From Ostrea edulis (Eukaryota), in the NCBI RefSeq assembly GCF_947568905.1, contig NC_079164.1:52948001-53012000 (forward strand): DNA of 64,000 nt, in the 5' to 3' direction. Of the stretch, positions 34,099 through 36,071 are shown piece by piece. The notes below the pieces were generated by a model. That model saw only the letters and a list, made by a program, of their open reading frames with translations. It was not told the DNA's origin and did no database searches. Position 1 is the stretch's first letter. Each line of letters starts with the position of its first letter. The translations under genes and the position numbers were made by a program.

Positions 34099-36071
34099 TT
34101 TTAGCTCTTCTGAGCCAAAGGCTCAAAGAGCTAATGCTATGGCCATTTGTGCAGTGTGCGGTGTGCGTAAACTTTTTAGAAAAAGGGCTATAACTCAAGA
34201 ACCCCTTGGCCAATTTTGTTTAAATTTGTTACAGGGTATCATTGGCCCAAGGGCTTTCATACATACTAAATAGAGGGATGTGACCCTTTAACAAGGGGAG
34301 ATAATCAGGAAAATACAAACAAAAGTAGTGGTTGCTAAAAAATCTTCTTCTCAAGAACCACAGGGCAGATTATCACCAAACTTACACATAAGGATGAGGA
34401 TATGTTGTAGATTAAAAATTGTTCAAGGCATTACCCTGGGGCAAAGGGCGTGGTCTCAAGGTCACTTCAAAGTTGACCTAAATTTAAATTTTTTTTAAAT
34501 TCCTTAAATCTTAGATATTTTAGTCATTATAAGGACTAGGATCATCAAATTTTGACAGTTGATGCATCTTAGGACCTTGTGTCAAGTTGTTTCAAAAGTA
34601 GGTCACGGTGACCTACTTTTTGAATTTTGCAGGTATTTATTTTAAAATTAATTTTGATGCATATCTTGGACACTTTGAAGCCTATGATGATCAAAACTTG
34701 TCAGTTGGTGGATCATGGGACCTTGAAAAGCGTCAACTGAAAAATAGGTCACCGTGACCTACTTTCTGAATTTTATGGCTTATCATTTATAGATATATTT
34801 TAAGATGTTATTTCAAATACCGAGAGGTTTAGAATCATCAAATCTTGTAAGTTGATGCATCTTGAGGCCTTGAAACATATTTATAAAAAAGTAGGTCACA
34901 GTGACCTACTTTTTGAATTTTGCAGATATTCAAATTTCACATTTTCAATTTTAGATGCATATTTTGGGCACTGTAAAACCTAGGATCATCAAACTTTGTC
35001 AGTTGATGCGTCTTCAGTCTTCGGTTTGTGTCAACCAAAAAGTAGGTCACCGTGACCTACTTTTGGTATTTGACAGCTAAATTACTATATTTCAGACACT
35101 ATTTGACCTACAATCATCAAACTTTGTCAGTTGATGCATCTTCAGTCTTCGGAGTGTATCGACCAAAAAGTAGGACACTGTGACCTACTTTTGGCATTTG
35201 ACAGTTATATTTATATATTCCAGTCACTAATTGACCTACAATCATCAAACCTTGACAGTTGATGCATCTTGAGTTAACGGAGTGTGTCGACCAAAAAGTA
35301 GGTCACCTTGACCTATTTTTGGAATTTGACGGCTATATTTATATATTTCAGATACTATTTGACCTACAGTCATCAAACTTTGTCAGTTGATGGGTCTTGC
35401 ATGTTCGAAAGGTTTCGACCAAAAAGTAGGTCAACTTGACCTACTTTTGGAATTAGACACCTATATTTATATATTTCAGATACTATTTGACCTACAGTCA
35501 TCAAACTTTGTCAGTTGATGCGTCTTGCATGTTCAAAGGGTGTTGACCAAAAAGTAGGTCACCTTGACCTACTTTTGGAATTGGACGGCTATATTTATAT
35601 AATTCAGATACTATTTGACCTACAGTCATCAAACTTTGTCAGTTGTTGGGTCTTGCATGTTTGAAGGGTGTTGATGAAAAAGTAGGTCACCTTGACCTAC
35701 TTTTGGAATTTGACGGCTATATTTATATATTTCAGATATTATTTGACCTACAGTCATCAAACTTTGTCAGTTGATGGGTCTTGCATGTTCGGAGTTCGCT
35801 GACCAAAAAGTAGGTCACCATGACCTACGATTGGAATTTGACAGCTATATTTCAATATTCAGATACTAATTGGCTTAAAATCATCAAACTTTGTCAGTTG
35901 ATATTTCTTGGGTTCTCAAAATGTGTAAACCAAAAAGTAGGTCACATTGACCTACTTTTTTGAATTCTTTGGATTTAACTAAATATTTAGAATACTAAGA
36001 GGCTAAGAATAGAAATGGTGGGGTTGTACAATTTATCAGAAGAGCGATTCTAGGCCCTTGGGCCTCTTGTT
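34099..36071 (+). mobile_element. HINE-type element carrying an 11-unit satellite array (146-151-bp then 128-bp units)
   Basis: 5' ttttagctcttctgagccaaaggctcaaagagct; 3' tcagaagagcg..gggcctcttgtt (subterminal inverted gctcttctga/tcagaagagc); tandem array at about 34530-35960. Confidence 0.88.

What the first reader, a model, noticed from the sequence alone, without database searches (positions are those of the whole stretch)
34594..35960. Mobile satellite array of 11 phased palindromes, each a consensus ERE (IR3) built mostly from inverted RORE-like sites
Seen: AGGTCA-nnn-TGACCT starts at 34600, 34746, 34893, 35044, 35172 (one mismatch), 35300, 35428, 35556, 35684, 35812 and 35939; spacing is 146, 147, 151, then 128 six times, then 127. 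Arms usually extend to AAAAGTAGGTCA/TGACCTACTTTT. The 3-nt spacer varies (CGG, CCG, CAG, CTG, CCT, ACT, CCA, CAT) while the arms hold. A second CATCAA..TTGATG inverted pair sits in each unit. Knowledge: IR3 is the estrogen-response element and WAWNTRGGTCA the ROR/Rev-erb (HR3/E75) element; molluscs have ER, ERR and HR3/E75-like receptors. Inference: a Helentron-type element may spread homotypic nuclear-receptor clusters, here 2-3 kb downstream of synaptobrevin. The alternative is cruciform selection linked to array amplification.
Basis: partly seen in the sequence, partly recalled or inferred. Interest (0 to 1): 0.72.

Follow-up and report, generated by a model that had tools for sequence, protein, structure and literature searches.

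The report
Transposon hairpin repeats mimicking hormone-response elements
The eleven evenly spaced "oestrogen-response-element" palindromes are real, but they are the conserved hairpin box of the tandem repeats inside one young copy of a very abundant rolling-circle transposon (a non-autonomous Helentron) of a flat oyster, and inserted copies lose them at the neutral rate, so it is an ordinary mobile element and not a demonstrated hormone-receptor switch.

Summary
All 11 AGGTCAnnnTGACCT sites lie at the stated coordinates with the stated spacing (0.11 expected by chance).

The array (34515-35960) is the central tandem-repeat module of a 1,974-bp non-coding element, 34098-36071. The element has the Helentron/HINE hallmarks: T-run ends, 5' subterminal inverted repeat (subTIR) with its complementary inverted repeat, a GTGY microsatellite, a 3' subTIR with a hairpin, and unrelated flanks with no target duplication.

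About 1,700 copies exist in this 895-Mb genome. They supply nearly all of its 12,153 perfect IR3 palindromes (36 in the reversed-pattern control).

Three rate comparisons place the constraint:
- **Between repeat units:** arms diverge 4.5%, the rest of the monomer 37%.
- **Between two subfamily consensuses:** arms 2.7%, rest 12.6%.
- **Private post-insertion substitutions in 76 copies:** arms change as often as the rest (ratio 0.91 against the rest, 1.13 against the left flank).

So the constraint acts on the transposing lineage, not on inserted copies. The variable spacer is mostly decay of a central CpG.

The most likely role, inferred only, is as single-strand hairpins or protein-binding sites used in rolling-circle transposition. 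Nuclear-receptor binding is untested.

The scan found the same family before on other DNA (s1-307018), with the same reading.

The parts
34098..36071 (+). Whole non-autonomous Helentron (HINE) copy, subfamily A, 1,974 bp
   Evidence: 29 other genomic copies align at 92-99% identity from 34096-34098 to 36070-36074 and are unrelated beyond those points. 60 copies share the same termini with different flanks. There is no ORF above 59 aa. The copy is 1.0% diverged from the consensus of 41 copies.
34098..34136 (+). 5' end: T-run, 5' subTIR AGCTCTTCTGA (34103-34113), inner palindrome GAGCC-aaa-GGCTC, and complementary IR AAGAGCT (34126-34132)
   Evidence: Read from the sequence. It folds as a single-stranded DNA hairpin at -13.2 kcal/mol, z -5.35. 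It matches the subTIR plus IR layout described for Cg_HINE and DINE-1 (PMC7492417, PMC4067079).
34149..34168 (+). Degenerate GTGY microsatellite-like stretch of the left flank
   Evidence: Read from the sequence. HINE left flanks end in short 4-nt microsatellites (PMC7492417).
34238..34439 (+). Left-flank segment resembling one Cg170/HindIII-type oyster satellite monomer, including the box AAAAATCTTCTTCTCAAGAACC at 34338-34361
   Evidence: blastn matches to other arrays in the window at 28.7-29.2 kb, 51.2-51.7 kb, 9.1 kb and 22.8 kb, 66-100% identity.
34515..35960 (+). Central tandem repeats: a first partial unit, three units of 146-151 bp, seven or eight units of 127-128 bp; each ends in the 27-nt palindrome
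   Evidence: The same unit order (146, 147, 151, n x 128, 127), with 5-10 short units, is seen in the other copies.
34594..35959 (.). Eleven palindromes AAAAGTAGGTCA-nnn-TGACCTACTTTT at 34594, 34740, 34887, 35038, 35166, 35294, 35422, 35550, 35678, 35806 and 35933 (27 nt each)
   Evidence: As single-stranded DNA each folds into a 12-bp stem at -10.5 to -10.8 kcal/mol, z about -6. The perfect 25-nt form occurs 8,310 times in the genome against 0 in the control.
34541..35903 (+). Second conserved box (hp2) ATCATCAAAnnTTGTCAGTTGATG, one per unit, at 34541, 34687, 34834, 34985, 35113, 35241, 35369, 35497, 35625, 35753 and 35880
   Evidence: Between-unit divergence is 11% against 37% for the rest. 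It is only a weak hairpin (-3.5 kcal/mol, z -2), so its conservation looks sequence-based.
35102..35752 (-). Extra half-site TTGACCTAC just upstream of hp2 in six of the 128-bp units (35102, 35230, 35358, 35486, 35614, 35742)
36036..36071 (+). 3' end: 3' subTIR TCAGAAGAGC (36036-36045), palindrome AGGCCC-tt-GGGCCT (36052-36065), terminal CTTGTT
   Evidence: Read from the sequence. The 3' end is conserved in 60 copies. The 5-bp-stem hairpin is predicted but is not better than shuffles (z -0.7).

Best explanation
**What it is.** Window 34098-36071 is one young copy of an abundant non-autonomous Helentron (HINE) of a flat-oyster genome, about 1% from its family consensus. The 'satellite' is the element's central tandem-repeat module.

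**What is conserved.** Each repeat unit keeps two boxes: a 27-nt palindrome (12-nt arms, 3-nt centre) and a 24-nt box (hp2). The sequence between them drifts freely.

**Where selection acts.** The boxes are held constant only in the lineage of elements that go on to transpose. Once a copy has landed, they mutate at the same rate as the rest of the element.

**Most likely role (inferred, not shown).** The palindromes are cis-acting parts of the transposon:
- In the single-stranded rolling-circle intermediate they would fold into eleven strong, evenly spaced hairpins.
- As duplex DNA they would offer dimer-symmetric binding sites.
- They may therefore serve the Rep/helicase machinery of the autonomous partner, or complementary-strand synthesis. 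This would resemble the way reiterated subterminal motifs serve other DNA transposons.

**The nuclear-receptor resemblance.** The match to ERE (IR3) and RORE is a true property of the sequence, but nothing here shows it to be functional.

**Shown:** element identity, copy number, and the pattern of conservation. **Inferred:** the hairpin or binding role.

**Confidence.** About 0.95 for the element's identity, about 0.85 for the lineage-only constraint, and about 0.4 for the hairpin or binding role. The single figure given is for the statement as a whole.
For: **Identity**
- The boundaries are shared by 29 copies.
- 60 copies have the same T-run, subTIR and 3' hairpin ends and unrelated flanks; 57 of 60 have TT before the 5' motif; no target duplication is seen.
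- The 5' subTIR/IR hairpin folds at -13.2 kcal/mol.
- There is no ORF above 59 aa.
- The layout equals that published for Cg_HINE and DINE-1.

**Abundance**
- A 30-nt left-flank motif with up to 3 mismatches occurs 1,702 times, control 0.
- The 25-nt palindrome occurs 8,310 times, control 0.
- Element depth is 100-1000 times that of the flanks in two DNA runs.

**Lineage-level constraint**
- Pairwise divergence between the 11 units: arms 4.5%, hp2 11%, spacer 47%, rest 37%.
- Subfamily A against B consensus, units 1-5: arms 3/110, hp2 5/120, rest 54/427, left flank 37/404. Fisher p = 0.0015 for arms against the rest.

**No constraint after insertion**
- Private non-CpG substitutions in 41 A and 35 B copies: arms 0.60% and 1.79%, rest 0.72% and 1.88%, left flank 0.55% and 1.56%.
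- Pooled ratio for the arms: 0.91 (0.77-1.05) against the rest and 1.13 (0.95-1.31) against the left flank.
- Fixed-versus-private contrast, arms against left flank: p = 3e-4.

**Hairpin potential**
- -10.5 to -10.8 kcal/mol, z about -6.
- A two-unit stretch folds with z -5.1.
Against: - No autonomous partner was found or examined, so no transposase is linked to the motif.
- No published function exists for Helentron central repeats in the papers I read.
- Selection is not strict per unit. Unit 2 is degenerate in both subfamilies, and a sister pair (the window copy and L001) spread with one broken palindrome.
- Both families are young (private divergence 0.6% and 1.8%). Weak host constraint on up to about a fifth of arm sites, or on a few individual loci, cannot be excluded. 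The AGGTCA core alone is 0.76 (0.59-0.94) of the 'rest' rate, though 0.94 of the left-flank rate.
- The exact match of the whole 11-mer to the ROR/Rev-erb consensus, together with AGGTCA direct repeats in other HINE arrays, hints that the hexamer itself may matter.
Confidence: 0.65

Rival explanations
1. Host exaptation. The arrays act as homotypic clusters of nuclear-receptor sites (ER/ERR on the IR3; ROR/HR3 or Rev-erb/E75 on each extended half-site) and regulate nearby genes such as synaptobrevin.
For: - The sites are perfect consensus IR3 sites, and each arm fits WAWNTRGGTCA (sequence compared with my own knowledge of the consensus).
- A mollusc ER binds the vertebrate consensus ERE, and oyster ER is a constitutive activator (highlights and abstracts of PMC3778743 and PMC3886901).
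- Transposon-borne EREs bound by ER-alpha are known in human cells (PMC2853111).
- This family supplies nearly all of the 12,153 perfect IR3 sites of the genome.
Against: - Inserted copies lose arm positions at the neutral rate.
- This very copy has two private arm mutations.
- The about 1,700 copies are spread in both orientations.
- No paper in the library links oyster transposons and EREs.
- No binding, chromatin or expression data exist here.
Confidence: 0.07
2. Transposon-level use of a host receptor. The motif is conserved in the active lineage because binding of a host nuclear receptor helps the element, for example through open chromatin or germline activity. The element thereby floods the genome with receptor sites as a side effect.
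For: - The conservation is sequence-specific and at lineage level.
- The core hexamers are intact in all 11 units of the A consensus, while the A/T extensions vary in two units.
- Other HINE-type arrays in the window and genome carry AGGTCA as direct repeats: GAGGTCAAAGGTCAAG occurs 971 times against 1 in the control, and the window holds 95 half-sites against 24 expected.
Against: - A non-autonomous DNA transposon needs no transcription of its own.
- Reads from another oyster-sample run (X21) carry the same 12-nt arms with a 1-nt centre in a different context. So the IR3 spacing required by ER is not the conserved feature.
- Arms of 12-14 nt with strong hairpin potential are equally explained by structure.
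Confidence: 0.12
3. Mechanical by-product. The palindromes persist because cruciforms or hairpins drive unit duplication and homogenisation of the array, with no sequence-specific function.
For: - Unit number varies from 5 to 10 among near-identical copies.
- The hairpins are strong.
- The oyster satellitome paper suggests that palindromic motifs facilitate tandemisation (PMC11136912).
Against: - Register-shift junctions between units are spread over the monomer. 23 of 54 junction classes exclude the palindrome, and the commonest one lies at phase 46-100 around hp2 (this analysis is noisy).
- A purely structural drive would keep symmetry, not the same 12-mer across unit classes that are otherwise 48% diverged.
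- The weakly folding hp2 box is conserved too.
Confidence: 0.15

Closest known systems
Cg_HINE elements of Crassostrea gigas (Vojvoda Zeljko et al. 2020, PMC7492417) and the pearl/CvA-type elements of C. virginica
   Same: Same architecture. The left flank has a subTIR, a complementary IR and a short microsatellite. Satellite-like central repeats of 130-180 bp form short arrays. The right flank has a subTIR and a stem-loop. Insertion is in T-rich/TT sites without target duplication, and thousands of copies are dispersed. Some Cg_HINEs also carry two different repeat types in a row, as this element does (one Cg170-like monomer, then the palindrome units).
   Different: - Different species (flat oyster).
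- The monomers (128 bp and 146-151 bp) had no match to anything else in the window.
- I could not compare them with the published consensus sequences, which are in figures or truncated supplements.
- That paper's main text mentions palindromes only in the right flank and reports no rate analysis of the central repeats.
DINE-1 / HINE of Drosophila, mites and mosquitoes (Thomas et al. 2014, PMC4067079)
   Same: The defining Helentron end structures: runs of 2-5 T at the boundaries that belong to the element, a subTIR a few nt from the 5' end, a 3' palindrome close to the 3' end, TT insertion preference, and optional central repeats.
   Different: Here the 3' palindrome ends 6 nt from the terminus, against about 8-35 nt in the mite families. 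No partner Helentron was identified here.
Transposon-borne oestrogen-response elements in mammals (for example ER-alpha binding within repetitive DNA, PMC2853111)
   Same: A repeat family that carries sequences matching a nuclear-receptor consensus and multiplies them across the genome.
   Different: In mammals receptor occupancy is measured. Here there is none, and inserted copies decay neutrally. The sites here are perfect, phased and eleven per element, which fits a transposon cis-element better than a chance near-match.
Reiterated subterminal transposase-binding motifs of En/Spm (CACTA) and Ac/Ds elements (from my own knowledge, not tested here)
   Same: Many copies of a short motif, often as inverted pairs, inside a non-autonomous element, conserved because the transposition machinery uses them.
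   Different: Those are cut-and-paste elements with known binding proteins. For Helentrons no such protein-motif pair is known.

Membership tests
HINE (non-autonomous Helentron) | Subterminal inverted repeats of about 11-15 bp near both ends | tested here: met
   AGCTCTTCTGA at 34103-34113 and TCAGAAGAGC at 36036-36045, 10 nt complementary. Conserved in 60 copies.
HINE (non-autonomous Helentron) | Short IR complementary to the 5' subTIR a few bp downstream (DINE-1/Cg_HINE type) | tested here: met
   AAGAGCT at 34126-34132. The 5' end folds at -13.2 kcal/mol, z -5.35.
HINE (non-autonomous Helentron) | Palindrome (stem-loop) close to the 3' end, after the 3' subTIR | tested here: met
   AGGCCC-tt-GGGCCT at 36052-65, 6 nt from the end; present in nearly all 60 copies. 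Its fold energy alone is not better than shuffles.
HINE (non-autonomous Helentron) | Insertion in TT / T-rich sites, T-runs at the ends, no target-site duplication | tested here: met
   57 of 60 copies have TT directly before the TTTAGCTC motif. The flanks are otherwise unrelated and no duplicated flank is seen. No empty site was recovered, so the exact cut is not proven.
HINE (non-autonomous Helentron) | Microsatellite in the left flank and satellite-like central repeats in fixed orientation | tested here: met
   GTGY stretch at 34149-34168. The array at 34515-35960 has the same order and orientation in all copies.
HINE (non-autonomous Helentron) | No coding capacity; mobilised by a Rep/helicase-endonuclease Helentron with the same ends | tested here: inconclusive
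   No ORF above 59 aa.
Oestrogen-response element / nuclear-receptor response element | Sequence fits AGGTCAnnnTGACCT (IR3); half-site with an A/T-rich 5' extension fits the ROR/Rev-erb site | tested here: met
   10 perfect sites and 1 one-mismatch site. The arms AAAGTAGGTCA fit WAWNTRGGTCA (consensus recalled from my own knowledge).
Oestrogen-response element / nuclear-receptor response element | Bound by the receptor and conferring receptor-dependent transcription | not testable with these tools
   No binding, chromatin or reporter data are available. RNA contigs in run X19 come from other copies and show nothing about regulation.
Oestrogen-response element / nuclear-receptor response element | Maintained by selection in the host once in place (expected of exapted sites) | tested here: not met
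   Private substitution rate in the arms equals that of the other element positions in 76 copies.
Classical satellite DNA | Long homogeneous arrays, typically heterochromatic | tested here: not met
   Arrays have 8-14 units and are always framed by the same left and right flanks, at about 1,700 dispersed places.

The most novel reading that the evidence does not exclude
The specific 12-mer arm is kept in the transposing lineage because a host nuclear receptor, or another dimeric AGGTCA-binding protein, is recruited by the element. In spreading, the family has created more than 12,000 perfect ERE/RORE palindromes. That is over 99% of such sites in this genome, enough to reshape or titrate the oyster's receptor binding landscape. 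AGGTCA direct repeats in other Helentron arrays would then be a second instance of the same strategy.
Probability: 0.1. Interest if true: 0.75.

Novelty: new member of a known kind. Interest (0 to 1): 0.3.

Why it matters
- **Motif scans.** This is a caution for motif-based regulatory annotation in oysters. Almost every perfect ERE in this genome is a transposon hairpin (12,153 against a reversed-pattern control of 36), so ERE scans near genes will mostly report this element.
- **Transposon biology.** The contrast between strong conservation along the active lineage and neutral decay after insertion is indirect evidence that Helentron central repeats carry cis-acting function. Their role has been an open point, and this family offers defined motifs to test.
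- **If receptors do bind.** The family would be an invertebrate example of a transposon shaping a nuclear-receptor cistrome.

Tried and rejected
- **Published consensus sequences.** I looked for the monomer or its palindrome in the oyster HINE and satellitome papers. The sequences sit in figures, in a truncated spreadsheet (CL1 only) or in supplements not held. I therefore cannot say whether this repeat is one of the 52 catalogued O. edulis satDNAs.
- **Larger sample of copies.** I tried to enlarge the left-flank-ascertained sample to 80 copies. I did not try another route, so there was also no search for the autonomous partner.
- **A-versus-B alignment.** A full-length alignment of the two consensuses misaligned the array tail. 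It was replaced by units 1-5 only.
- **Junction mapping.** Mapping of unit gains and losses by unique 14-mers is noisy. I use it only to say that junctions are not confined to the palindrome.
- **Neighbouring array.** My pattern for the 36.3-kb array was mis-specified (AARTGTAGG...) and caught only one variant, with 14 hits. No conclusion is drawn from it.
- **Reads.** Read laying gave no empty-site joint, so insertion polymorphism is neither shown nor excluded.
- **Central CACnGTG.** I considered that it might be a collapsed transposon-TIR junction or an RSS-like heptamer. I dropped this as a consequence of any CAC-n-GTG palindrome.
- **Hairpin RNA.** I considered an RNA role (miRNA-like). 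A 12-bp stem is too short, and no transcript evidence exists.
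Full report
**1.
The expected count is 0.11 and no shuffle reaches 11.
- The spacings are 146, 147, 151, six times 128, and 127.
- The repeat finder shows arms of 12-14 nt, AAAAGTAGGTCA(C) / (G)TGACCTACTTTT, with 1-3 nt between them.
- Every unit also holds the second box ATCATCAAAnnTTGTCAGTTGATG.
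- Tandem Repeats Finder sees only the 128-bp part (34978-35959), because the three longer units share little beyond the two boxes.

**2. What carries the array.**
- A two-unit query hits the window's own genome (895 Mb, 52 contigs) at more than 1,700 candidate places. The 40 that were scored are 98-100% identical.
- In 30 fetched loci the unit order is the same as in the window. Only the number of 128-bp units changes, from 5 to 10.
- Aligning the window against these loci gives sharp common boundaries at 34096-34098 and 36070-36074, with unrelated DNA outside.
- The element, 34098-36071, has these parts in order:
  - a run of T;
  - the 5' subterminal inverted repeat AGCTCTTCTGA;
  - a complementary AAGAGCT 13 nt downstream, which together fold at -13.2 kcal/mol;
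  - a degenerate GTGY microsatellite;
  - one monomer resembling the Cg170/HindIII oyster satellite;
  - the array;
  - the 3' repeat TCAGAAGAGC, the palindrome AGGCCC-tt-GGGCCT and CTTGTT.
- Sixty copies show the same ends. 57 of them have TT before the 5' motif, and none shows a duplicated flank.
- There is no ORF above 59 aa.
- This is the published anatomy of non-autonomous Helentrons: Cg_HINE in the Pacific oyster (PMC7492417) and DINE-1/HINE in arthropods (PMC4067079).
- A 30-nt left-flank motif occurs 1,702 times with up to 3 mismatches, control 0.
- Earlier notes of this scan call the genome a flat oyster. I did not check the species name.

**3. Weight of the family among 'EREs'.**
- The perfect 25-nt palindrome occurs 8,310 times, control 0.
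- The bare IR3 AGGTCAnnnTGACCT occurs 12,153 times, against 36 for the reversed pattern.
- Among the first 50 listed sites on contig 1, all but one lie in arrays of this family.
- In two DNA runs the summed contig depth over the element is 100-1000 times that of the flanks, and one contig bridges the 3' junction.

**4. Where the conservation comes from.** I made three comparisons.

| Comparison | Arms | hp2 | Spacer | Rest of monomer | Left flank |
|---|---|---|---|---|---|
| Between the 11 units of this copy (pairwise divergence) | 4.5% | 11% | 47% | 37% | – |
| Consensus A (41 copies) against consensus B (35 copies), units 1-5 | 3/110 | 5/120 | 3/15 | 54/427 | 37/404 |
| Private non-CpG changes within A | 0.60% | 0.57% | – | 0.72% | 0.55% |
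| Private non-CpG changes within B | 1.79% | 1.80% | – | 1.88% | 1.56% |

- Between the long units and the 128-bp units, the arms still diverge 4.5% while the rest diverges 48%.
- For A against B, arms differ from the rest at p = 0.0015. Subfamily A is about 1,964 bp with 11 palindromes. Subfamily B is about 1,583 bp with 8.
- Private changes are variants carried by at most two copies, that is, changes made after insertion.
- Pooled, the arms show 157 private changes. 173 are expected from the 'rest' rate (ratio 0.91, 0.77-1.05) and 139 from the left-flank rate (ratio 1.13).
- A fixed-versus-private contrast in the manner of McDonald and Kreitman gives p = 0.007 (arms against rest) and 3e-4 (arms against left flank).
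- Misregistered alignment of repeats would inflate the 'rest' rate and so favour 'conserved arms'. The absence of a difference is therefore conservative.
- The B copies and 17 others (12 A, 5 B) were chosen by their left flank only, so the array did not influence their selection.

Conclusion: the boxes are under constraint in the lineage that keeps transposing, and under none that I can detect once inserted. The window copy illustrates this. Most of these changes are shared with a single sister copy on another contig that has different flanks.

**5. The spacer.**
- In the older unit types the centre is CAC-C/G-GTG, that is, 13-nt arms around one base with a CpG. The variants CTG, CAG, CCA and TGG are its deamination products.
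- The 128-bp units of subfamily A inherited CCT. Unit 7 has ACT, which restores a 13th A-T pair.
- Spacer sites show the highest private and fixed rates.
- 'Arms hold while the spacer varies' is therefore true, but it does not need a protein that ignores the spacer.
- In a run labelled oyster metagenome (X21), which does not cover the unique flanks, about 480 reads match only 35931-35964. They lack two letters at 35943 and have unrelated sequence on both sides. The same holds at the unit 3 palindrome.
- So the same 12-nt arms exist elsewhere with a 1-nt centre. The arms, not the IR3 spacing, are the conserved feature.

**6. Mechanism.**
- As single-stranded DNA each palindrome folds into a 12-bp stem at -10.5 to -10.8 kcal/mol, z about -6. 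hp2 folds only weakly (-3.5 kcal/mol, z -2). A two-unit stretch has z -5.1.
- Helentrons are thought to move through a single-stranded rolling-circle intermediate (established knowledge; PMC4067079). Eleven phased hairpins would form there.
- I therefore favour a cis-acting role in transposition: recognition or loading of the partner's Rep/helicase, or priming of the complementary strand.
- This step is inference.
- The idea that palindromes merely drive array growth is weakened by two results. Junctions lie all over the monomer (23 of 54 classes exclude the palindrome, noisy). The same 12-mer is kept across otherwise unalignable unit classes.

**7. The nuclear-receptor reading.**
- The sequence match is exact. 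Mollusc ER binds the consensus ERE and is constitutively active (PMC3778743 and PMC3886901, seen). In-vitro binding is therefore to be expected and would not by itself mean function.
- Against a host role stand the neutral decay (section 4), the private mutations in this copy, and the lack of any literature link.
- A hint that the hexamer itself matters remains:
  - The window holds 95 AGGTCA/TGACCT against 24 expected.
  - At least four other arrays in the window carry AGGTCA as direct repeats. One of them, at 25.9-26.3 kb, sits in another HINE-like element.
  - GAGGTCAAAGGTCAAG occurs 971 times in the genome against 1 for the control.
- I rate a receptor-based explanation, host-level or transposon-level, at about 0.2 in total.

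**8. Novelty and verdict.**
- Helentron-borne satellite-like repeats are well described in oysters. This is a further family of that kind in a flat oyster, possibly already among the catalogued O. edulis satDNAs (PMC11136912), which I could not check.
- An earlier follow-up of this scan on another copy of the family (s1-307018) reached the same reading. That is not independent support, but I re-derived its two claims here.
- Two points are modestly new. One is the lineage-versus-insertion contrast, which argues that the central repeats have a cis function. The other is that this one family accounts for nearly all perfect EREs of the genome.
- Interest is 0.3.

Noticed in passing
window 13269-13760, 23257-23710 (- strand), 25898-26331, 36320-36700: Other tandem arrays of about 135-145 bp carry AGGTCA as direct repeats (for example TTTTGAGGTCAaAGGTCAAGrGTCA, a DR1-type pair). 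The 36.3-kb array starts with the same 12-mer AAAAGTAGGTCA as the palindrome arm. The window holds 95 half-sites against 24 expected. GAGGTCAAAGGTCAAG occurs 971 times in the genome against 1 in the control.
   Followed up: partly
window about 25820-26470: A second HINE-like element: a C-run and a GTCC/GTCY microsatellite (25878-25893), three 145-bp units (25898-26331), then the hairpin GTGAGCA-tt-GCTCAC and CTCTTGT near 26435-26465.
   Followed up: no
window 13918-13945: TTTTAGCTCACCTGAGCCAAAG is a Helentron-type 5' end differing by two bases from this element's 5' end. The same two changes (34108 T>A, 34109 T>C) dominate reads of run X21, so this variant terminus is widespread.
   Followed up: no
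window 34030-34097: The 70 nt directly upstream of the element are themselves repetitive. Depth rises about six-fold in the 33970-34103 bin, which also takes in the element's first 6 nt, and there is one extra hit in L003. They contain GAGGCCCATGGGTC, which resembles a HINE 3' hairpin. The element may have inserted next to the end of another one.
   Followed up: no
L001 (G000:C6:53958565-53961820) against window 34098-36071: A sister copy 99% identical to the window copy shares most of its private changes, including the broken AGGACA core, but has different flanks. A copy with one damaged palindrome, or its immediate source, was therefore still mobilised very recently.
   Followed up: partly
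run X21 laid on window 35931-35964 and 34893-34907: Reads of an oyster-sample run that lacks the unique flanks hold the same 12-nt arms with a 1-nt centre, in a different sequence context. This is probably a related repeat of another species.
   Followed up: no
window 34238-34439: The left flank contains one monomer of the Cg170/HindIII-like oyster satellite, with the box AAAAATCTTCTTCTCAAGAACC. Arrays of that satellite lie at 8.7-9.2 kb, 28.7-29.2 kb and 51.2-51.7 kb.
   Followed up: partly
window 49912-50317: A 40-bp unit is repeated 10.1 times at 98% identity. It is unrelated to the finding.
   Followed up: no
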